Below, in pieces: positions 1 through 42,715 of a stretch of DNA of 64,000 nt (the first letter of the stretch is position 1; each line of letters opens with the position of its first letter). The notes under the pieces are model-generated. The model had not been told where the DNA came from, ran no database searches, and saw nothing but the letters and a program-made list of their open reading frames with translations. The position numbers and the translations under genes are program-made. The DNA is from Diadema antillarum (lineage: Eukaryota). The DNA is taken from positions 992,001 to 1,056,000 of the forward strand of contig NW_027271040.1 in NCBI RefSeq assembly GCF_040938485.1. Direction: 5' to 3'.

Positions 1-1517
1 GAGAGAGAATCAAATTGCTTGTGATGAAGCCACTGTAAGAAGAGATCATTTCCATTGCAAAAACACCAGTTGAGAAGTAGTAACTTAGCAGTAGTAGCAG
101 TACTAGAAGTACTAGATTATTGAAGTAGTTGCATACGATCTGTAAAAGTGGTAGAGTTAGAACTATCACTATTAGTAGAAGTGGCAAAAGTATTTGTAGT
201 AGTTGTAGTAGAATTAGTCATCATAGTTTTAGCGAAAAAATTAGTAAGCATAATGATGGTCAACTAAATACCTGCCAGTCCAATCTCTTTGAAGCTGTGG
301 AAATGTGGAACTGGTATCACCTCTTCCATATGAATCAAATAACATATATTTTGACCAATCATATCAGAGGGAAACCAATTCATGATCCGTTTCTCCGTTT
401 TGTCGTCGGTCTCTGTGACACAAACAGACTTCCTTTAAGTTGGCAATCGGAATGCAACTCTGTGGGTCGCTCACAGGGAGTCGGCATTCCGGATCTGTGA
501 TAGTTGTCCTATTTACAGGTGTAATGGCAGGGGAGATCGTGGAAGTATTACGTACTTCCACTTTGTACAGCTAGTCTTGTTGGTCTGCACTGCATGCTCC
601 CCAATGGCGTGGATATGTCTTAGGTTTTTGGGGTTGTTGTTTTGGTCTTAAGTGATGCCGTTGTGTATCTCTCTGTACCTCTGCAGCTTCTGACCAAGTT
701 ATGACAAGTGCATTGTTATTTAAGCTCTGTTGCAACAGGAACACAATTTTTAATTTGTTTTAAGACATTAAGAGATTTGCATGTATTGCTTGATGCATTG
801 AAGGAGATTTCCTGTGTCCTTATCATTGATCCTGTCATATCAGCCTTCAGTTTCGTTCTTTTTATTTTGCTGAATTCTGCATGTAGGCCCCATGTGTACT
901 GGTATTGCTTGTGTTAGGATCATCAATAGTGTTGCCATAGCAACTGTAGCCATGACATCTGCAAGCTTTTGCATGATCAGAGGAGATAAACGGGTTAGAG
1001 GAGTTAGGTCCACCAAGACTAGCCAGTAAAGGGGGGAAAGATTGATCCTGCTGAGACAAGGTCATACCACCAGCAACGATCGATGACTGTTGTGGTGTTT
1101 CTCTTAACGGGACGAGCCGAGCTGAGTCACAGGCCAGACTCAAGTTCATCTGATCACCAGTGCTGCGTGGTATTGACTGACTACTACTGGCTTCCACCAA
1201 ATCAGATGCACGTGTGTGTGTGTGTGTGGCATCCCGTTAGCTCTGGAGCACCAAGCTCTCACAAGGAGGGACGAGATTGTGAGTTTTAGTCGGCTGTCTG
1301 GGTTTATCGTCTTGGCTCTCGTGTTTCTCAGGGTCTCATGATTTGGACCTCGTGTCATAGATGTGACTCTTTTTGCCAGAAACGGCCAGATATACCTATA
1401 CCTGTGGATGTTCTCTCCTCTCCCATTTTTTTCCCCTTTGATTCTGTTTTGTTGGGATTGAAATGCAGATGTCATTTTGAGTTCCCATAGTGTTTCTAGT
1501 GTTTTGATGTTTACCAG

Positions 1518-2587: not shown

Positions 2588-4066
2588 ACCCCGCCCTCAC
2601 CCATCCGATCCAAGATGAGTCTGCAGGACCTGTCCCCGGAAGACCTCCGCAAGCAGCTGGAAGAGGAGTTCAAGCTCCCGAGCCATGACATCCGGAGCCA
2701 CGCCTGGTTCCATGGCGGCATCAGCCGTGACAAGGCGGAGAAGCTGATCTGCGAGAACGGGGACTTCCTTGTGAGGGACTCCATCTCGAAGCCAGGGAAC
2801 TTTGTGCTCACTGTTCGGTGGAAGGACGCCCCCATGCACTTTGTGATCAACAAGGTGGTCCACAAGGCCCACTCACCCTATGCAAGTGTTCAGTACCAGT
2901 TTGAGAAAGAGTGCTTTGACACTATACCATCACTCATTAAATTTTATGTAGGGAGTGGTAAGCCTGTGTCGTTGGCATCGGGAGCCGTGAGCCAACGACC
3001 CATCAACAGGACTCAACCCCTCAGTTACACGGACAGCCGGTATGCTGCAACGAACAAACTGCCGGCATCATACATCTATGGTACATTGCAAAAGAAAGTT
3101 GTGACCCCGCGCAGGGGGTCCATGAATGGGAGCGACCCCCTGCGGCAGAGGTCGGGGAGCAACCCCGCCTCGCTGCATATCGTTAATGGTGGTGGGGAGA
3201 AGCAGAGTGTGAATCGTGCTGACAGCCAGCCTTTGCTTGGACGGACTTCGCCCACGCACAGGCCAGGCCCCACTCACACGATGCGAGACCATGTGATCCA
3301 CGTCAGGACGGGCAGCGAGCCCATCTTGAGTCCCAGCAGAGATTACGCTCCCATCGAGAGCGATTATGCGGAGACCCGCCCGTGTCTGAACACCTCTGCC
3401 TCTGATGAAGAGGGGACTATGCCAGGGGTGAGCAATGACACCTCTCCCGGCACACCTTCAACAGGGAAAGTGCCAGGTGTTGTGGACGGACTGGAACCCA
3501 GTGTGCCAACAGAAGAGTCTCCTGTGACAGACTCCCGGGTAAGGGATATGCCACCATCAGGGACGCTTGCACCTTTGCAGACGAACACCCTTATGAAGCC
3601 ACCCATCAGAGAACACATCTACAGCGAGATTGATGCTCTTGATGACGTGGAGGAGAGACCCACTCCGGTCCGCTTCACCATGCTCCATGACGAGGACTCC
3701 AAACCCATCCCGGCTGAAATCATCCAACCCCCAGTCTCGACAGACACGGTGGACGGAGAGAGCCTGGATGTCAAGCCCCGCAAAAAAGTGGTATCCGGGA
3801 CGCGATTCTCCGTGCTGGACAGCGACTATTCCCGCGTGGCCCAGCGTGTGTCTCCAAACCACCTTGAGAAGATCCCGGACACGCTGCAAACAATCCTGCC
3901 AGTCAGGGAGACGGAGTCGGTGTTCCAGCCCCAGGATTTTACCAGTTCACTGCTGGAAGCGGAAAGCAAACCCCTGGACAAGACCTGTATGGACACTGTC
4001 AGGCGCATGCTCCTTGAGCTGAATCCACTTGCACTGGCGAGGCATCTCACTCTGGTTGACACACAG
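2588..4066 (+). CDS. BCAR3: BCAR3/SH2D3C-like, large exon: SH2 domain, Ser/Pro-rich linker, start of Cdc25-like (RasGEF-fold) domain
   Basis: ORF 2615-4096 with WFHGGISRDKAEKLICENGDFLVRDS (SH2) and LARHLTLVD. Acceptor ttcctcag|ACC, donor ACACAG|gtaaat; 1479 nt, phase 0/0. Confidence 0.95.
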
Positions 4067-7000
4067 GTAAATGAACCATCTATCCTTGCTAAATGACAAT
4101 GGTAAGATATTCCATCACTTCCCTTTGGCCTCTTCTCTGTTCACAATAGATCAGGATGCAAATACAGAAGTATGAGAAAAATTGCTGATAGCTTTCTAAA
4201 TGGTGCAGAGTATAGCGTGTTTATTAAGAAGTTTGTACTGGATTATAAAATTCAGTACAAATCAGCGGATTTATTGAGATTGTCTGGGGTCCAACCAAGT
4301 TGACCCTTGTGAGCAATTTTACTGTTGTGGTGGCTCTTCTTCTTGATCTTCTTCTTTGTGTAATACCAATAAAGAGATGTATTTCCTGTATATGTGTGCC
4401 AGAGTCTAGAGTTACCACAAGTAGGCCCTGGGCAACCCTGTTTGGCAAACACGCTGAATAGACACACCTGCTTCTAGTTATCCCTGACAAGGGTACAAAC
4501 CACGGAACAGGAATTCAACAGAGCATTCTTGTATGAAAACAGGGAAGTCATTTCTCAGTAGACAAGTCATAGGATCTTGGGACTTTACTGAGTGAATACT
4601 GTATGGAAATCTCCAGTGGATGGAATTTAATTATATACAGATAATAAAAGAACCTACATAATTCATTGACAAATAATAAGGAGCACACTTGACCAATGCT
4701 TTGATCTTCAATTTATGCTATAAACTCATGTCCTTGTGTACGTTGCAAATGTGTATGAGTCCTGACGGGTCTTGCATAGACTAAGAGATACAAAAAGTTT
4801 TAGCTTTAATGTCTGTTTTCATGTCTTGATTTGTGCAAGAATGAATTTAATATCATGTTTGGTGTAAATGACTATCTCCTCCTTCCCACATTTTGAGTGG
4901 TATTAACCCATCTCCTTTAGGAACTTGTTGGTTCCTGTACAAAGTCTCTGAGAACTTCAAGTTTGTGGGGATTAGGTCAAAGACGTTTCATGCTTCCTTC
5001 ACCTTGTATGGTGGGACATAAAGATGCACCGGATATATTTACACTCTATTAACACAGAGTTTTATATCTGGCAAAAGCTTCAGATACAAAGTAGTGATAA
5101 TACTTACCTGTAGTAATAATGATAAGTTAAGTTCATGTGTGGCTAGAAACCCACTAAATGAATATAAAAAGTAACATTTATGATGTGTGTCTGTGTGTGT
5201 ATATGTGCCAGCGGATGTGTGAGACATTGCGTGTTTAATAATCAAATTAATGAACATGTGTACACAGGACTTTGTGTTGTTGTTGAGCTGTGAAGTAGAC
5301 ACCATGTTTGCCCGAGAGCTCTTAAATACATTTGCATTGTACCAGGCTAAACATTACTGCTGCAGCAGACTTGGCAAACAGCCTTAGTGAAACGTAAGGT
5401 GGCACCTTCCTTACCATCTATGGTGTTTGTAAATAGCCCCATTGTGAAGGAAATGTTTGAACAAGGATGAACCCTTTTGGTTGTGCGCATCAGCGCAAGA
5501 GTCAGACAATGTAGAAGCCCCATTTAGAGCATACATTTTTTGTAACTGCAGGCCCAATGAGACTGCGCCAGTTTGTAAACATCCATTCGCTCAAATTGGG
5601 ATCAGAAATTATTTGTAATCAGAGACCTGATTCTTTGTGAATTCCTATGTTCCTAACACAAGCAGATGCTCGTCTTTTGTTTGTTTGTTTTTTTCTTCTG
5701 CTTCTTCTCCTTTTTTGGGCTGCTACATTTCTCTGCAGCAAATGTGTAAAATGACATTTTCTGTGGGGGAAGCAATGCAGGAGAGCTTGTGAAAGTGACC
5801 TCATGATCAAAGTTCTATGACCCAGGCAGTCAGTTTGAAGTGCTATAGGTGTTTGATAGTCTACTACCAGCCATTACAAAAGTCTTGTGACATTTTGTAA
5901 TTCATCCTGATACATTGTATTTTGCCAATTTATTGTGGAATGTTAAGTTGTAAATTTTCAAAAAGTGAAATGATTACTTTTGGAGTATAAAACCTCTGCC
6001 TCACTTGACTCTAACCGACTCTGCAAGATTCAAAGTTTGTGGAATGAATGAATATGAGAATGATTAAAAACACTCTTGATACCAGTGATTGCTTTTGGGC
6101 CTTCAAAGATCCCTACATAGATTCATCAAAGTAACGTGTGTCATGATTTTGGATACATATTACATCTATAGACTGCATATACATAGACTGTTTGATCTTT
6201 GTGATATGAGTGTTCATGTGTGTGTACAATGTATTTCAACTGATAGAATGACCTTATAAAGCTTTTGAAGATTTGTTACAAGTCCCATTCTGCAGATATC
6301 TGGTAACCTTCTGTATAATCTGAGATTCTGTGTGATCAGTTGGTGGAAATTCCAAAATTTCATGCTCTCTGTTCAATGCATGAAAAAAAAAATAATTTCA
6401 CAAATTCTCGATCAGGAGGAAGAACAGGGAGTGGTACTTGAAAAAAATCCAAAGTTTAATTCTTCTATATTGCAAATTATTCATATCATGAACTAAATGT
6501 CTGTATTTAAATGTAAACCAAATAATTTTTGTCACACCAGTAAATATGAAGGTTGGTTATTTAAAACTCTAATTTTTTTGTAACAATTACAAGAAGCTCC
6601 AAATTTTGTGTCGTGATACAATATATTATCTTTCCCCAAGTTATAAAGGTTTTCTATGTCAAGAATGCAACTTCTCTAGCTGTTGAAAATTGTGAATTCA
6701 AAATTGAGTTACATGCAACTCTTATTAGGAGCATGTCCATACATGTGTACATGAAGAGGAAGGACATGTTTGCTGTTATATGAAAACGATTATAAGAAAA
6801 AAAAAAACACACCACATACTATACAAATGGCTGCTAATCATGAAAACTTCAGAACTGATTGTACAGGCTGCATAATATTTATTGTGAAGATGGTGTGACT
6901 TGATAGTCCCACGTATAGGCCTAGATGCTTGCAGGAACCGGAATGCTGGAAAATTCATTTTCCTGTAACCAGTGTACAACAATTACCCTTTTCTCGGCAG

Positions 7001-7101: not shown

Positions 7102-7405
7102 GTCAGTGAATGGATTCAACTCTTATAGACTTAATATTAAGTTCATATCTCTGAGAGAACAGCCAAGACTTCCTTGCAAAACCAATATCAGAAAGAGGAA
7201 GTAAAAAACAAGGAACAAAACATGGGCTCCTTGTAGTTTTAAATCATACCTTCTGTCTGCATACTGTGTGATGTTTGTTTTATTTGTTTGTTTTCACTCA
7301 TATTCACTGTATTGCAGTTATTAACTTTTTGTATCAAGGCTTTCTGGGTTGAGAATAGGAGTGGCCAGGTTCTTTTTAAAATAAACTGGATAAATAAGAA
7401 AATGA

Positions 7406-7790
7406 ATAAAAGCAGTAATAGCAATCTGTTTGCAATGATAAAGGCCTTGTAATGGTCAAAATTTCACTGGTAAGTTTTCCCATGGTCGGTGTATTGTATA
7501 TCAAGTCAATTAATAGATTCTCCCCTATTAAAAGTAAATAGATAAAAGCAGTAATTGCAGTCAATTTGCAATGATGAAGGCCTTGTGATGGTCAGAATTT
7601 TCACTGGAAGTTTTCCCATGGTCTGTGTATTGTATCAAGTCAATTATTAGATTCTCCCCTAAGTAGGTAGATAAAGGCAGTAATAACAGTCAATTTGTAA
7701 TGATGAAGGCCTTGTAATGATTGGAATTTTCACTGGAAGTTTTCCCATGGTTTGTGTATTGTTATCAAGTCAACTCTTGGATTCTCCCCT
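7406..7790 (+). repeat. Tandem triplication of a ~130-bp unit (intron)
   Basis: Unit starts ATAAA(A/G)GCAGTAAT at 7406, 7542 and 7671. Confidence 0.85.
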
Positions 7791-8640
7791 CTCTTAATAG
7801 CACTATAGGTATCACTTTGTATGCAGTGTTCTACAGCCAAGGCATCTATGTGTTAAAATCCATGGGCTGTCCTCGACAAATTCTCCTCCCTTTTTTATGC
7901 CCATGAAAATTTTATGGGGTCTCGGTGTTAAAGTGGCCTTGCCCCAGAAAAAATGGTATTGGTAATAATGTGAATAGATGAAGATCATCAAGCGTCAAGA
8001 GCTAGTCTTACTTTCAGCCTGCTGGCTGATTCTGTGCCTTCTACATCATCAGTTTAGAGACATGTAGAAGGGCCACAATAGGGTAGTGCAATTATCCATA
8101 TACTCTTGATCAAAGATTGTGACCATGCCCAAGTCCTACACATTAAAAAAAAAAATACATATATATATATGATGCTTCAGAAGTAACATACTGTTTTAAT
8201 GTCTCTGAACATATACTCAGTATCATTTGGATGCAGCAAATACAACAGTATATCATGCGAAACACTCAGTGAAAGTTTGAGGACAAGCGCTTGAAGATTT
8301 TTGAACTTTTGAAAGTTTTAGACAATTCCATGTGCCACCTTTTCTAGATGGGAGCTCTAAAACAATATTTGTGCTGTCACTGTACAATAATGATCACGCT
8401 GTTAGAATAAAAATATCAAAATCTCTGCAGATGTATGTTGGACAATGAACAAGCTTTGCAATCTTTCTTCTCCAGAAGTCATGGAGAATAATGTTTGCCT
8501 TATTAGGTTTCAGAAGAAAACATCAAGAAAATGTGTAATTTGCATGAAATTTGAAAATGTTTAGACTTTTCTAAAATGTTTTTACATTCTTCTCTTTTGA
8601 GTATTAATTATCTTTCTATATCTATCTAGAGTCAAAAGGG

Positions 8641-8679
8641 GCCTGAGCTTTCGATCCTAGCAGAATCTTCATCAGAGGC
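8641..8679 (-). ncRNA. Minimal type I hammerhead ribozyme motif of Penelope-like-element type
   Basis: Minus strand reads GCCU-CUGAUGA-A-GAUUCU-GCU-AGGAUC-GAA-AGCU-C^AGGC. It has an intact core, 4-bp helix I, 6-bp helix II and palindromic helix III (AGCU). Confidence 0.75.
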
Positions 8680-8998
8680 AAAATGACAAGCAAGATGGGA
8701 AAGCAATCTATCTATCTATCTACTCTATTTTTTTTGGGGGGGGGGGGTGGAGAGGGGAACTCCTCTTTAAAGTATGAAACAAACAAAGCAATCTACTAGA
8801 AAATGCAGCTAGCTTATCTTGATTCTTCAGGGGGTCAGCACTGTTTTTATGTTGTGGTCATCATTTCTCAAACATTACACTTTGGTGATTTATTGGGTCA
8901 ATGCTCGAGGGTGGAGCTTTTTTAGGGTGATGTTAAAACAATCATTGACTTCCTGGGCATTGCCTCCACAGAGAGGCAGGCTGGAGAGCAGTTATAGT

Positions 8999-9386
8999 TA
9001 AAGGGATGGTACAAGTATTGGTGGAAATGAAAATTGGGCTTTAACTTTTTCGCGAGATACCAAGAAAACGCTTATGAAATAGTACAGAGCATGCCATTTT
9101 AAGAGGAATTCAAAGTTTATTTGATGAAAATTGGGTTTAGAATAGCTGAAACATTGAAAAACCAAGTAAAACAAAATGATTGTAATAAAATGTGGGTCCC
9201 ACACTTTATTAGGATCACTCTGTTTTGGATATGTCCGCCGTCTCAAAATCAATTTTCATCAAATAAACGTTGAAATCCTCATGGAATTACATGCTTTTTC
9301 ATATTTCATAAGAGGTTTCTCACTATCTCACCAAAAAAAATAAAAACCTGAAGTTAAGTCTCAACCAAAACTATATGATCCCTTTA
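8999..9386 (+). mobile_element. T2/Kolobok-type MITE family A, copy 1
   Basis: TAAAGGGAT...ATCCCTTTA ends with a large internal palindrome; near-identical inverted copy at 14074-14465. Confidence 0.8.
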
Positions 9387-11249
9387 CAGACCAGGTAGCA
9401 TGGGGCTGGCCTGATGGAATTGATCTTCTTTTGCTACCCACTCCACACCATTACCCTCAAACTTCACTGATGTGTTCTACTGATATTACTGCATTTGCTC
9501 AATCTAGACATTTCATTCCCTTGAAGTTCACTGTAGGGAATTTTTGTTTACATGAATTTTCAGGTCTTAATGGCCAATGTTAGTAAATCAAGAGAATGTG
9601 GAAACTTTTTGGACTTCAGTAAACAAGGTAGCAACAGCGCTTCAAGTCTTTCTTTAGCCCCTGTGGGTTTATGCTACCAACTTCCCCATAGCTGTCTCAC
9701 ATGCAATGATATAGGTGATCTGTACACTACACATGCCCTTGCTGATGTGCATTGTTTGTATAATATTATCAGATCTTTGCCTGTTTTTGTTTCCTGGATG
9801 TGATTCATTATGATGCATGGCGCAAATGCTGAAACGATAACGCTGAAATTGATTTATGACCTTGTTTAGTAGGAAGTAGAATAATATGGTCCATTATGTG
9901 CAGTTTTAGTGTTCACATGCCGTGTCACGATACAGCCGCCTGAACATCCATTGTGAAGAAATAATTATTCCTTTCCTCATGATGATAACCTGTGACCTTC
10001 ATGAAACCTGGCATAGATTCTGTTGAAATGCTGACTTCTTCATGAACCTTCCAGTCCAGCCAAATCTATCCAAGTTGTGAAGGAAAAAGGAGCGATGTTA
10101 TGTCCTCATAAGTGGATTTGTCATGCACATAGCACATGTACATGTACACCTGTATGTACTGCATGATTCATCACAATGCAATGCATTACATACTTCCAAG
10201 ATTACCAGGCTCCCTGTAATAACAGCGTTGAAATCTTTAAAAAAAAAAATTATACTTGTGGGTTTTTTGTTGCGAACTTTTTTTCCGCCAAAACCCACCC
10301 AACCATTGCGATGGTGAGAATCGTGTGGATTTACATGTCTTGTTTTAATAAATCATTCATTTTTGTTCAGAAGGGAATTTTCTATGCTCTTCCTCTACAG
10401 TTTTACAAAGTGACTTTTATTGTGAGCTGGAAGCATTTCGTTTAGATAAAAAAGAACAGAAAATAAGATAACTCCAAAGTATTGTTAATTGAAGTATTCA
10501 GTAAAACGCCACTCTCGCTTCTTTGTGGCTTCTAAAGAATTCAATTTCTTTTATTGTTCTATGTGTACGTCAGCCAATTACATCCTGTTACCTGAGACTT
10601 ACATGGTGATTATGATGGAAAATAAAGTTGGTTAGGTATCAAAGTAGTGCATATTGATTTCTCAAAGCCCTTGCTGATAATCAGCAATAAAAGTAATTGA
10701 TGGAAGAAGTCTTGTTTTCTCTGCACAACTGAGAGTTAATGTGAATAAGTCTAAAATGTGGTGGGTCATCCGTCTATCAGCAGAACTCAAAGTTACTGAA
10801 GATGGTATGTGATATGTTTTTCGAAGAAGTATTATTGCATGCATATAGAACAAATGCATATATATTGGTGTGATTTATCTTTCTTTTTGGATTATTATCA
10901 TTTTTATTTGTCGCTATAGCTGTTTGATAATCAGTTTCAGAAAATATGTGTATATTTCATTTGTCGCCAGTCGGTGATCTTTTACCAAGCCCAACATTTT
11001 AGTTGCCTTCTTCTAGACTTCTGTGATATGAAAGGAGTTTAGTGTGCAATGATTTTTGGGGATGGTGTTACCAGCCTTCTATTTCTTTTGTGTCTGAGCA
11101 GGCCTGTAGGTTATAATGTAAATCCTTTCCCAAAGTGATGGCCATATCACAAATCTGTTCTATGATTTCTTTGATGTGGAGGAATCCTGGAGAATTTGAG
11201 ATGTTGCCAAGGCACAGACATTGGAGATCACAGAAATGATCATTCCTTT

Positions 11250-11452: not shown

Positions 11453-11761
11453 AATTTATACAAACCATGCCTAGAACAAAGGAACAATACAGGAAAAAGA
11501 TACTATAACATTTTGACAGAACACAACATGAAAACAAATATTTTTGATACTATGTGGGAGGATCAGCATTGACCATTGGTCTTTCTGTGGCCAATCACAA
11601 GATTTACAACTAAATATGCTTACATGTACATTAATGCAATACTAAAAACTATAAAAGAAACCAGAAAGAATGTGTAAGTCTGTGTGGTGAGGTACATATA
11701 CATTGAATGCAACTAAGTTTTTTTTTTTTCTCTCTCTCTGTTTATTTTGTATGTGCTACAG

Positions 11762-11930
11762 ACATAACTGCCTAAAGATGTTCTGCATGGCAACCCTTTT
11801 GACCTGTGATGACCTGGAGGTCAGAGTTCACGTGCTGCATCAGTGGCTCCAGCTCGCGGAGACGTTGCGGGGTTCCCTAGGCAACCTCTTCAGCTTCGCC
11901 ACCATCATGGACGCCCTTGCTTCAAAGCAG
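11762..11930 (+). CDS. BCAR3: BCAR3/SH2D3C-like exon, GEF-like domain
   Basis: gtgctacag|A CAT...AAG CAG|gtattt. HNCLKMFCMATLLTCDDLEVRVHVLHQWLQLAETLRGSLGNLFSFATIMDALASKQ; phase 2/0. Confidence 0.93.
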
Positions 11931-12322
11931 GTATTTTCTCCCTCTCTCCTACAACGTGTAGTACCTTTCTCCTCTAATTTAAACCCTTTTCCAGTCCTCA
12001 CTATTGTTTATTCTTGATTGTCAAACATCAGGCTTTGTATTTAAAAGTAAGCTGCACAAAAGTGCAGATTTTTCATCCATTTGATTTTTTTTTTAATTAG
12101 GCAACTTAGTTCAGGAATTTCAGTTCAATATTTGAAATGTGCAATAGGAGTTTGATAATTATATGATAATCGCAGGGATGTTGATCAATATACATGCTTG
12201 TGTGAATTGTTGTGAGATATTGTCATGCGCTGTAAATCTGTATGTCCATTCTCTTTAGTTATAGTTATCAAATCCATGAATTTTGTGTTAGTTTATCTTA
12301 TGACTGTTCATGTCATCATGCG

Positions 12323-41292: not shown

Positions 41293-41623
41293 GTGCATGT
41301 ATAACATAAAGCATATCAAATCTTGCTCTGGCAGTGAAACTTTCTTGGGCAACATTAGAACCATTCCACATTATTTGTACGCGAGCATTTAGAGAGATGT
41401 ATTAAATAATGGTATATATACCTGTACCACATTTCTTACAAGCACAAATCTTTTGGTGCACAAATCAGCCAAAATATGTAAGTGCCATAACCTAATGTCT
41501 AGCAAAAAATATGGGGCCACAAAAATAAAGAATAGTACATACCGTATGTGATATGAGAAAAAAAAATAGAACGGGTGTACAATCTCATAATATCCTAATG
41601 GCATAGGCAAGCATAAGATATTG

Positions 41624-41851
41624 GTAAAGAGTTCCCTAAACACATCCAAAAGTTGTATTTACCAGTGACAGTTTCGACGACAGGCTGTCGTCTTTTTCAA
41701 ACGATGGCTAATTGGCAACTGATGATATGGCCATCGTTTGAGAAAGATGACAGCCCGTCGTCGAAACTGTCACAGGTAAATACAACTTTTGGATGTGTTT
41801 AGAGAACTCTTCACTTGTATTTATCAACCATCCTTATGAACTTATTTTGCA
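41624..41851. mobile_element. Penelope-like inverted-repeat insertion with two hammerhead-like cores and a 15-bp TSD
   Basis: 82-bp inverted arms at 41627-41708 and 41730-41811. TSD AAGCATAAGATATTG at 41609-41623 and 41852-41866. Each arm reads UUGA(G/A)AA-A-[helix II]-GAAACUGUC. Confidence 0.7.
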
Positions 41852-42715
41852 AAGCATAAGATATTGTTCACATCAAAACTCACTAAAGCAGCACTACCGA
41901 TGACTGTATGTGTGATTGGATCAATTTTACATTGCCACAAAGGAAGCACTAAAGCGACCATGGACAAGCTGCTATGGGACAGATGTCTGTATGTCACAAA
42001 AGATTAAGCAATGGGGGCAGATAGAGTTCCTTATTCATGAACACCATTGCTGCCAGAGGGCTCGAACTAATGACCTTGTGATTTAAAATCCTTGGTCTTA
42101 TACTCTCACACACTGATCGAGCCACAACAGACTGAATATCAAAATTATACAAGTTCAATTCTTACTAGTCAATCAAGTTTGTCTGCAGGTGATTGACTCT
42201 GTACACCTTGGTGAATGAGGAAAACAGGGAAAGTAACCCTGGATGCAGACTGAAAGTTTCATAATCTACAACTGATATGTCATTTTACCATTTATGGGTA
42301 TACTTTCATACATTTTCATATCATTCATATATTTACATATAAATATCAAAAATACCCTGAAAATCCACCACTAGGAAAGTATTGAGCTAAAAAAGAAGAG
42401 ACTACCCTGAAAAATTGGAAACCATCAGGTAATAGACTTCCACCATCCAAACTGGAAGCAAATACCTGAAACATAAGCTATATTCAAAATGAAGTTATAC
42501 AGTTACCATGCACATTTAAAAAAAATCATTATTATCATTATTATCTTTTGTACACAGCCTGCTGTGTATTCTTCACTCCGTTTAACACTACAGTCTGTTC
42601 AAAGAGAATGCATTTGCCTTGGTTATACATTGTAGTCATGTCCCTTTCTGTAGTGTTGTCCTTTAATAGCAAAGAACCATCCCTAGCACACTCATAGCAA
42701 AGGCATATATGAAGG

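What the first reader, a model, noticed from the sequence alone, without database searches (positions are those of the whole stretch)
8629..8706. Intact minimal hammerhead ribozyme (Penelope type) antisense in the BCAR3-like intron
Seen on the minus strand at 8679-8641: helix I GCCU/AGGC, core CUGAUGA, one extra A, helix II GAUUCU-GCU-AGGAUC, GAA, palindromic helix III AGCU, and cleavage triplet CUC. Known: Penelope-like elements and related retrozymes carry such minimal type I hammerheads whose palindromic helix III forms in dimers, and an extra A between A9 and G10.1 is tolerated in a natural viroid hammerhead. The ~78-bp insert sits between TCTA microsatellite tracts (possible ATCTATCTA duplication). 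Inference: it is a pLTR/retrozyme fragment of a family that targets (TAGA)n and still has a catalytically complete core.
Basis: partly seen in the sequence, partly recalled or inferred. Interest (0 to 1): 0.8.

Follow-up and report, generated by a model that had tools for sequence, protein, structure and literature searches.

The report
Truncated Penelope retrotransposon stub with hammerhead motif
The 80-bp insert is the dead, cut-short tail end of an abundant Penelope-like retrotransposon, and such tails normally carry this small hammerhead-ribozyme motif, so the motif is real but ordinary.

Summary
It has a complete hammerhead core, a 4-bp helix I, one unpaired A, a 6-bp helix II, a palindromic AGCU helix III and C17 at 8645.

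It is not a chance match. A descriptor scan found none in 200 random 64-kb sequences. The genome holds 307 exact and 1,338 near-exact (3 mismatches or fewer) copies of the 35-mer, against 0 for the reversed control.

The insert (8629-8708) is the last 80 nt of a 4.08-kb Penelope-like element (PLE). That element has a 908-aa ORF with reverse transcriptase and a GIY-YIG-like endonuclease part. It shows tandem units, head-to-head inverted copies, graded 5' truncation and two classes of 3' end ("tail-less" and "tailed").

The window copy is the shortest copy sampled, is tail-less, and lies antisense in an intron of a BCAR3-like gene. The genome is probably the sea urchin Diadema antillarum.

All features match the published PLE "min-HHR" (Cervera & de la Peña 2014). 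Targeting of (TAGA)n is not supported, and the copy is not a retrozyme. A lone copy cannot form the dimer needed for cleavage.

The scan has already noted PLE-type hammerheads elsewhere in this genome and in this window. The kind is already known; interest is low.

The parts
8629..8708 (-). 80-bp, 5'-truncated, tail-less 3' end of a Penelope-like retroelement. It spans positions -63 to +16 relative to the hammerhead cut site of the family unit.
   Evidence: all genomic copies match exactly this span at 94-100% identity; aligned to a 4,076-bp tandem unit, it is the shortest of the 30 copies sampled and belongs to the +16..+22 class of 3' ends.
8641..8679 (-). Minimal type-I hammerhead motif (min-HHR), 39 nt. 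Layout: helix I 5' strand 8679-8676; core C3-A9 8675-8669; unpaired A 8668; helix II with loop 8667-8653; G12-A14 8652-8650; palindromic helix III AGCT 8649-8646; C17 8645; helix I 3' strand 8644-8641.
   Evidence: The features match the published PLE min-HHR description.
8629..8640 (-). The 12 nt (CCCTTTTGACTC) between helix I and the insert's 3' end. In the family this is where the proximal class of 3' termini falls, so it is the inferred first start site of reverse transcription.
   Evidence: 15 copies end at +16..+22 from the cut. PMC11167929 links the two classes of 3' end to two RT start sites.
8619..8628 (.). Candidate target-site duplication TATCTATCTA, left copy, inside a TCTA microsatellite.
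   Evidence: read directly. It is ambiguous because the target is itself a repeat.
8709..8718 (.). Candidate target-site duplication TATCTATCTA, right copy.
2615..4096 (+). Upstream exon-like ORF of the host gene, with an SH2 domain (context only).
   Evidence: Pfam SH2, E 1.8e-16.
11703..12017 (+). Downstream exon-like ORF of the host gene, with part of a RasGEF domain (context only). The insert lies between these two ORFs and antisense to them.
   Evidence: Pfam RasGEF, E 8.8e-7.

Best explanation
The insert is a dead-on-arrival retrotransposition product of a high-copy, canonical Penelope-like element (PLE) with a C-terminal endonuclease.

**Inferred mechanism.** The element's RT/GIY-YIG protein nicked an AT-rich TCTA tract. 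It began reverse transcription at the proximal internal start site of the element's RNA, 16 nt downstream of the hammerhead cut site. It stopped or switched template after only 80 nt. Because the hammerhead lies right next to the 3' terminus of the family unit, even this tiny copy carries the whole motif.

**Role of the motif in the parent element.** Units are tandem, 4.08 kb apart, each with one hammerhead. The published proposal is that pairs of motifs form a double hammerhead through the palindromic helix III, or fold with help from the element's protein, and process multimeric transcripts.

**At this locus.** The motif is a passenger. It is single, antisense to the host gene, and very probably inactive.

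**What is shown and what is inferred.** Shown here: the motif, its family membership, the element's architecture, and the distributions of truncation points and 3' ends. Inferred from the literature: the RT start sites, the cleavage chemistry and the need for a dimer.
For: **Family size and truncation**
- The 80-mer gives 1,870 first-look candidates, and the 40 scored are 94-100% identical.
- Only 41 candidates hold the element's 5' region.
- Coverage falls steadily upstream of the motif. Copy lengths upstream of the cut run from 64 nt to more than 1,500 nt, and the window copy is the shortest.

**The element's protein**
- One copy in L046 has an intact 908-aa ORF on the same strand as the motif. 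Pfam RVT_1 scores E 1.4e-9. GIY-YIG scores 21.4 bits against a cut-off of 22.6.
- The motifs LPKIHK, FDVSSLYTNIP, RYIDDIF and a CX4CxxC linker are visible in L031.
- 1,801 homologues have E<=1e-10. Many carry precomputed RVT_1 and GIY-YIG domains, and they come from echinoderms, amphioxus and a newt.

**Arrangement of copies**
- L046 holds three motifs at 4,076 and 4,070 bp spacing. Further direct pairs about 4.1 kb apart appear.
- Inverted head-to-head pairs occur.
- There are two classes of 3' end, at +16..+22 (15 copies) and +62..+87 (27 copies), plus copies that read through into the next unit.
- These are the pLTR, inverted-copy and tail signatures of PLEs (PMC8557442; PMC11167929).

**The motif itself**
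- It matches every listed trait of PLE min-HHRs (PMC4209133).
- Other min-HHR families in this genome keep the same architecture with different helices. Examples are GCUC/GAGC against GACU/AGUC, GGACAG/CUGUCC and GCGUCC/GGACGC. Helix III changes from AGCU to ACGU or AAUU, and helix I from GCCU/AGGC to ACUC/GAGU.
Against: - No Rfam hammerhead model matches, even at E<=10. This is expected for motifs without a helix III stem-loop, but it remains a failed formal test.
- GIY-YIG falls just under Pfam's cut-off.
- Within the family, some subfamilies carry a mismatch in helix II (GTTTCT, L051). The sister family has a mismatch in helix I (GACT/AGGC, L048/L049). Pairing is therefore not strictly kept.
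- The roughly 100 nt around the motif are conserved between families as a block. Conservation of the core could partly reflect another role, such as RT binding or initiation.
- The 80-nt context prefers a different fold, and cofolding of two copies gives a plain duplex rather than the double hammerhead.
- No cleavage or expression data exist for this organism.
Confidence: 0.9

Rival explanations
1. The solo motif is a working ribozyme at this locus. An antisense transcript through the intron would cleave itself, or pair in trans with transcripts of other family copies, and so affect the BCAR3-like gene or yield a processed RNA.
For: All catalytic-core positions are intact and helices I and II can form. 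The insert is identical in the 98.4%-identical duplicate locus. Many other copies could supply a partner in trans.
Against: - Helix III is only a 4-nt palindrome and needs a second copy, and there is no second family copy in the 64-kb window.
- Published min-HHRs show no monomer activity and only weak dimer activity in vitro. In Anolis the motif needs the element's protein.
- The motif is antisense to the only gene seen here.
- The copy differs from the commonest family sequence at about 4 of 80 positions, like any decaying copy.
Confidence: 0.04
2. It is a piece of a non-autonomous "non-LTR retrozyme": a short tandem repeat carrying hammerheads that spreads through circular RNA.
For: Animal retrozymes are reported to derive from PLE pLTRs (bioRxiv 10.64898/2026.07.22.740005). 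Two exact motifs lie 55 nt apart, and another two 314 nt apart, in direct orientation elsewhere in the genome.
Against: The window holds a single copy with no tandem array. Its sequence is collinear with the 3' end of an ORF-bearing 4.08-kb unit. The graded 5' truncation fits abortive reverse transcription, not unit-length repeats.
Confidence: 0.03
3. The 80-mer is a terminal inverted repeat of a DNA transposon or MITE, and the hammerhead look is incidental.
For: Several loci hold two copies in inverted orientation, 0.14-1 kb apart. This was my first impression.
Against: - The inverted pairs are head-to-head, with variable inner ends and conserved outer 3' ends.
- Copies also occur in direct 4.1-kb tandems around an RT/endonuclease ORF.
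- Most copies are solo, with graded 5' truncation.
- Inverted 5'-truncated copies are a known PLE arrangement.
Confidence: 0.01
4. It is a chance match, or a box C/D snoRNA-like sequence.
For: There are weak Rfam hits: SNORD74 at 13 bits, E 6.5, over 8611-8686 minus strand, driven by the TGATGA box.
Against: The score is far below the gathering score of 41 bits. The descriptor gave no hits in 200 random windows. The exact motif occurs 307 times, against 0 for the reversed control.
Confidence: 0.005

Closest known systems
Minimal hammerhead ribozymes (min-HHR) of metazoan Penelope-like elements (Cervera & de la Peña 2014, PMC4209133)
   Same: - Type I topology with the CUGANGA...GAA core.
- Short helix I (4-5 bp) and long helix II (6-8 bp).
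- An unpaired nucleotide between A9 and G10.1, and a G10.1-C11.1 pair.
- No loop 3, with palindromic 15.x-16.x positions.
- Hundreds to thousands of copies per genome, mostly solo copies, plus opposed pairs 100-700 bp apart.
- Location in the repeat that flanks the PLE ORF.
   Different: Nothing structural. In this family the cut site lies only 16-22 nt from the proximal 3' terminus of the inserted unit. I found no open paper naming echinoderm examples. No activity data exist here.
Poseidon PLE of Anolis carolinensis (PAc; Frangieh et al. 2024, PMC11167929)
   Same: RT plus a C-terminal GIY-YIG endonuclease, tandem units forming pLTRs, two internal RT start sites seen as tail-less and tailed genomic 3' ends, AT-rich targets, and a hammerhead near the RT start region.
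   Different: - In PAc the hammerhead overlaps the ORF start, and RT starts about 85-92 nt downstream of the cut.
- Here the ORF starts 523 nt after the cut, and the two end classes lie at +16..22 and +62..87. The "tail" is therefore about 45-65 nt, not 30-40.
[quoted passage not shown] That is seen by motif only; no tree was built.
Non-LTR retrozymes of animals (Cervera & de la Peña 2020, PMC7229834; Li et al. 2026 preprint)
   Same: Type I hammerheads that depend on dimer formation, and a sequence relation to PLE pLTRs.
   Different: Retrozymes are short tandem monomers without an ORF that give circular RNAs. This locus holds a single truncated copy of an autonomous element.
Rfam Hammerhead_1 (RF00163) and the other Rfam hammerhead models
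   Same: The same catalytic core and type I order of helices.
   Different: No match, even at E<=10. The motif has no helix III stem-loop and no loop-loop tertiary contacts.
CChMVd viroid hammerhead with an extra A after A9 (De la Peña & Flores 2001, as cited in PMC4209133)
   Same: An extra unpaired nucleotide between A9 and G10.1.
   Different: That is a type III viroid ribozyme with a stable helix III. The likeness concerns one nucleotide only. I did not read that paper itself.

Membership tests
PLE minimal hammerhead (min-HHR) | Catalytic core C3-U4-G5-A6-N7-G8-A9 and G12-A13-A14, with a C3-G8 pair | tested here: met
   CTGATGA at 8675-8669 and GAA at 8652-8650. U7 in this copy and C7 in most copies falls at the one free core position.
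PLE minimal hammerhead (min-HHR) | One unpaired nucleotide between A9 and G10.1 | tested here: met
   A at 8668. Listed as a conserved trait in PMC4209133.
PLE minimal hammerhead (min-HHR) | Helix II of about 6-8 bp, closed by G10.1-C11.1 | tested here: met
   GATTCT/AGGATC gives 6 bp including one G-U, with loop GCT. Other families in the genome keep this helix with different sequences.
PLE minimal hammerhead (min-HHR) | Open, short helix I (4-5 bp) | tested here: met
   GCCT/AGGC gives 4 bp. The sister family L048/L049 has one mismatch.
PLE minimal hammerhead (min-HHR) | Palindromic 15.x-16.x positions with no loop 3, followed by H17 | tested here: met
   AGCT then C at 8649-8645. The sister family has ACGT, and another family has AATT.
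PLE minimal hammerhead (min-HHR) | Lies in the terminal repeat or 3' end of a PLE | tested here: met
   It is collinear with the last 80 nt of a 4,076-bp unit carrying an RT/endonuclease ORF.
PLE minimal hammerhead (min-HHR) | Self-cleavage 3' of C17, as a dimer or with protein help | not testable with these tools
   Fold predictions do not settle it.
Rfam hammerhead families (RF00163, RF00008, RF02275-7) | Score at or above the model's gathering threshold | tested here: not met
   No hammerhead hit at gathering score in the window, and none at E<=10 in 8450-8900.
Penelope-like element, canonical C-terminal endonuclease type | Reverse transcriptase domain | tested here: met
   RVT_1, E 1.4e-9, 38.5 bits against a cut-off of 29.6, in the 908-aa ORF of L046. 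The RYIDD and LPKIHK motifs are visible.
Penelope-like element, canonical C-terminal endonuclease type | GIY-YIG endonuclease C-terminal to the RT | tested here: inconclusive
   PF01541 scores 21.4-22.3 bits against a cut-off of 22.6, at residues 811-842 of 908. Many homologues carry precomputed PF01541.
Penelope-like element, canonical C-terminal endonuclease type | Partial tandems (pLTR), inverted 5'-truncated partners, and an optional tail at the 3' end | tested here: met
   Tandems at 4.07-4.15 kb. Inverted pairs. Two classes of 3' end. Definitions are in PMC8557442.
Neptune/Nematis clades of PLEs | [quoted passage not shown] | tested here: inconclusive
   CSASRCIIC (CX4CxxC) lies upstream of the GIY-YIG motif. 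No phylogeny with reference PLEs was made.
Non-LTR retrozyme | Short (about 170-400 nt) head-to-tail monomers, each with a hammerhead, and no ORF | tested here: not met
   The window holds one copy, and the family unit is 4,076 bp with an ORF.

The most novel reading that the evidence does not exclude
In this family the hammerhead fold abuts the proximal start site of reverse transcription: the cut site is 16-22 nt upstream of the tail-less 3' ends. The roughly 100 nt around it are conserved between families that are otherwise only about 64-70% identical. The motif may therefore serve mainly as the structure that the element's protein recognises to begin reverse transcription, with cleavage a secondary, protein-assisted activity. 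If so, an 80-nt stub like this one would hold the minimal recognition module, and active elements could in principle copy it again in trans.
Probability: 0.1. Interest if true: 0.5.

Novelty: already known. Interest (0 to 1): 0.12.

Why it matters
It matters little in itself. It is one of more than a thousand decaying tail ends of a Penelope-like retrotransposon, carrying a ribozyme motif described for this class of element in 2014.

It has three modest uses:
- It helps annotate a sea-urchin genome with a PLE family that appears undescribed in the papers I could search.
- It shows why solo minimal hammerheads are so numerous: the motif sits at the extreme 3' end, so every truncated copy keeps it.
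- The family gives a clean two-peak distribution of 3' ends. That matches the two RT start sites measured biochemically in a lizard PLE, extending the signature to an echinoderm.

Tried and rejected
- **Rfam.** Scans of the whole window at gathering score and of 8450-8900 at E<=10 gave no hammerhead, only chance snoRNA-like hits.
- **DNA-transposon TIR idea.** Prompted by inverted pairs about 1 kb apart. Dropped after finding the RT/endonuclease ORF, the tandems and the 5' truncation.
- **Solved structures.** Sequence searches with two ORF pieces gave no hits at E<=1.
- **Full-text search.** Pieces of the motif sequence gave no paper. Searches for hammerhead plus sea urchin, echinoderm or Penelope gave nothing specific.
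- **Fold predictions.**
  - The 39-mer folds as helices I and II (-9.4 kcal/mol).
  - The 80-mer prefers another fold (-14.2 kcal/mol).
  - Two 39-mers cofold into a plain duplex (-26.6 kcal/mol) rather than a double hammerhead.
  - So energy models neither support nor exclude activity. One script crashed without output.
- **Per-position constraint among copies.** Not attempted. I did not try to read more letters by other routes.
- **Formal covariation count across families.** Not run. Most other families are known to me only as printed pattern matches without a locus reference, and I did not retype them.

Full report
**What is in the sequence**

The minus strand of 8679-8641 reads as follows:
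- GCCT (helix I, 5' strand)
- CTGATGA (core)
- A (unpaired)
- GATTCT-GCT-AGGATC (helix II and its loop)
- GAA (core)
- AGCT (helix III)
- C (C17, at 8645)
- AGGC (helix I, 3' strand)

This is a complete type I hammerhead core with a 4-bp helix I, one unpaired A after A9 and a 6-bp helix II closed by G-C. Helix III is a 4-nt palindrome without a loop. On its own the 39-mer folds into helices I and II.

A descriptor that requires the core, both helices and a palindromic helix III finds only this site in the window. It finds none in 200 random 64-kb sequences of the same first-order composition. No Rfam hammerhead model matches, even at E<=10. I attribute this to the missing helix III stem-loop, but it stands as a failed formal test.

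**It is a repeat, and which repeat**

The window is contig C152:992001-1056000 of a 1.75-Gb assembly. An 86-nt query gives 1,870 first-look candidates. The 40 scored are 94-100% identical over exactly 8629-8708, so the insert is 80 bp.

The 35-mer from the core to helix I 3' occurs 307 times exactly and 1,338 times with up to 3 mismatches. The reversed control gives 0. Most copies have C at core position 7. The window copy has U, a CpG-to-TpG change at the one core position that is free to vary.

In other copies the homology continues on both sides. Coverage declines steadily upstream of the motif. Lengths upstream of the cut site range from 64 nt, in the window copy, to more than 1,500 nt. 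Only 41 candidates hold the element's 5' region. This is the 5'-truncation profile of a retroelement.

**The parent element**

- L046 (contig C728) holds three motifs in direct orientation, 4,076 and 4,070 bp apart.
- One L046 unit has an intact 908-aa ORF on the same strand.
- Pfam finds RVT_1 at E 1.4e-9, and GIY-YIG at residues 811-842 just below its cut-off.
- In the frameshifted copy L031 the motifs LPKIHKPGNPGRPI, FDVSSLYTNIP and RYIDDIF can be read, and a CX4CxxC motif lies ahead of the GIY-YIG motif.
- The ORF has 1,801 relatives at E<=1e-10, many annotated with RVT_1 plus GIY-YIG.
- The ORF starts 523 nt after the cut site.
- Further direct pairs about 4.1 kb apart, and inverted head-to-head pairs 0.1-1.4 kb apart, occur across the genome.

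The published hallmarks of Penelope-like elements are tandem units forming pseudo-LTRs, inverted 5'-truncated partners, and a hammerhead in the repeat (PMC8557442; PMC4209133). The CX4CxxC linker points to the Neptune/Nematis type, but I built no tree.

**Two classes of 3' end**

I aligned the copies to a tandem unit and read where each one ends relative to the cut site.

| Class | 3' end relative to cut | Copies |
|---|---|---|
| Tail-less | +16 to +22 | 15 (window copy at +16) |
| Tailed | +62 to +87 | 27 |
| Read-through | continues into the next unit's 5' UTR and ORF | 9 |

Frangieh et al. 2024 showed for an Anolis PLE that reverse transcription starts at two internal sites, and that genomic copies with and without a "tail" end there (PMC11167929). 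The pattern here is the same, with a longer tail of about 45-65 nt.

The window copy is therefore best read as a tail-less insertion that was abandoned after 80 nt. TATCTATCTA flanks it on both sides (8619-8628 and 8709-8718). This fits a target-site duplication, but the target is a repeat, so it is ambiguous.

**Target preference**

Among about 38 independent 3' junctions, only this locus and its duplicate lie in a TCTA tract. The flanks of the 12 independent tail-less copies are 70-73% AT, against 61% for the window. This agrees with the AT-rich preference reported for PLE endonucleases. The idea that the family targets (TAGA)n is not supported by this small sample.

**Evidence that the motif is kept as a structure**

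- *Pattern search.* I searched for core, one nucleotide, G...C, GAA and ACGT, without asking for pairing. It gave 293 matches against 41 for the reversed control.
- *Helix II across families.* The matches fall into several families whose helix II differs yet pairs.
  - Examples are GGACAG/CUGUCC, GCGUCC/GGACGC and GCCAAUU/AAUUGGC.
  - Two related families, GCUC(A)GC...GCGAGC and GACU(A)GC...GCAGUC, differ by three two-sided compensatory changes.
- *Sister family.* L048/L049 is about 64-70% identical overall to the window's family. It has ACGT where this family has AGCT, a two-sided change that keeps the palindrome.
- *Another family.* L033:2365-2401 has helix I ACTC/GAGT, helix II GGTGG/CCACC and helix III AATT.
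- *Against strict constraint.*
  - L051 copies have a U-U mismatch in helix II.
  - L048/L049 have a mismatch in helix I.
  - L047/L050 have the motif split by a roughly 250-bp insertion.
  - The whole 100 nt around the motif is conserved between families, so part of the conservation may serve RT initiation.

**Context**

The ORFs at 2615-4096 (SH2, E 1.8e-16) and 11703-12017 (RasGEF, E 8.8e-7) lie on the + strand. The insert is therefore in an intron of a BCAR3-like gene, with the motif antisense to it.

The organism is probably the sea urchin Diadema antillarum. A 99%-identical protein with that name sits on a contig of 768,985 bases, the exact length of contig C728. The window is not human.

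**Function at this locus**

Published min-HHRs show no cleavage as monomers and only weak cleavage as dimers. The Anolis motif cleaves only with the element's protein present, and is not needed for insertion in vitro.

This copy has no partner in the 64-kb window and no known antisense transcript. Energy models do not favour the double-hammerhead fold. I take it to be an inactive passenger, with confidence 0.9 for the overall reading.

**Comparison and novelty**

Every defining trait of the PLE min-HHR is met. So is the known genomic pattern of many solo motifs from truncated PLEs, plus opposed pairs.

The scan has already noted PLE-type hammerheads in this window (41609-41866; I read that stretch) and elsewhere in this genome.

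The kind is already known. The particular family seems undescribed in the papers I could search.

Noticed in passing
L001 (G000:C152:2090972-2094057) versus window 7125-10210: A second copy of this intron stretch lies 1.09 Mb away on the same contig. It is 98.4% identical over 3.09 kb and includes the 80-bp insert. Other loci are also duplicated with their flanks: C100:555552 and C100:3997846 are identical over 3,083 bp in inverted orientation, and L018 and L024 share flanks. These are either retained haplotigs or recent segmental duplications.
   Followed up: partly
G000:C202:3138222-3138311 and G000:C137:596897-597245: Two exact copies of the hammerhead 35-mer lie in direct orientation only 55 nt apart (C202), and two more lie 314 nt apart (C137). 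These could be mini-tandems, perhaps retrozyme-like or the result of template jumps.
   Followed up: no
L047:380-800 and L050:370-790 (minus strand): In an 84%-identical subfamily, the hammerhead is split inside helix II by a roughly 250-bp insertion that is rich in inverted GGGTCAG/CTGACCC repeats and looks like a MITE. The two loci are 98% identical to each other.
   Followed up: partly
L033:2365-2401 (+): An unrelated min-HHR family with the same layout: helix I ACTC/GAGT, unpaired A, helix II GGTGG/CCACC, helix III AATT, U17. The genome also holds at least six further families with ACGT as helix III.
   Followed up: partly
window 41609-41866: An inverted pair of fragments with TTGAGAA...GAA cores (U3-A8 type), an unpaired A and a 6-bp helix II. 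An earlier finding already reports it as a head-to-head PLE fragment.
   Followed up: partly
L031:4187-4316 and 8287-8416: A 130-nt inverted repeat, 85% complementary, brackets the roughly 3.9-kb PLE copy. The PLE may have landed inside a foldback or MITE-like element.
   Followed up: no
L031:3420-3899 (+): A 159-aa ORF beside the PLE copy matches immunoglobulin constant-type domains: C2-set_3 at E 4.5e-6 and C1-set at E 9e-6. This is unexpected enough in a sea urchin to deserve a look.
   Followed up: no
window 31971-32276 (+): An exon-like ORF with a histone-fold CBFD_NFYB_HMF domain (E 2.5e-19). From my own knowledge it resembles DR1/NC2-beta, which lies near BCAR3 in vertebrates, so this may be conserved synteny.
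   Followed up: no
window about 33950-34200: A run of N (595 in the window). It is an assembly gap or masked stretch and was left untouched.
   Followed up: no
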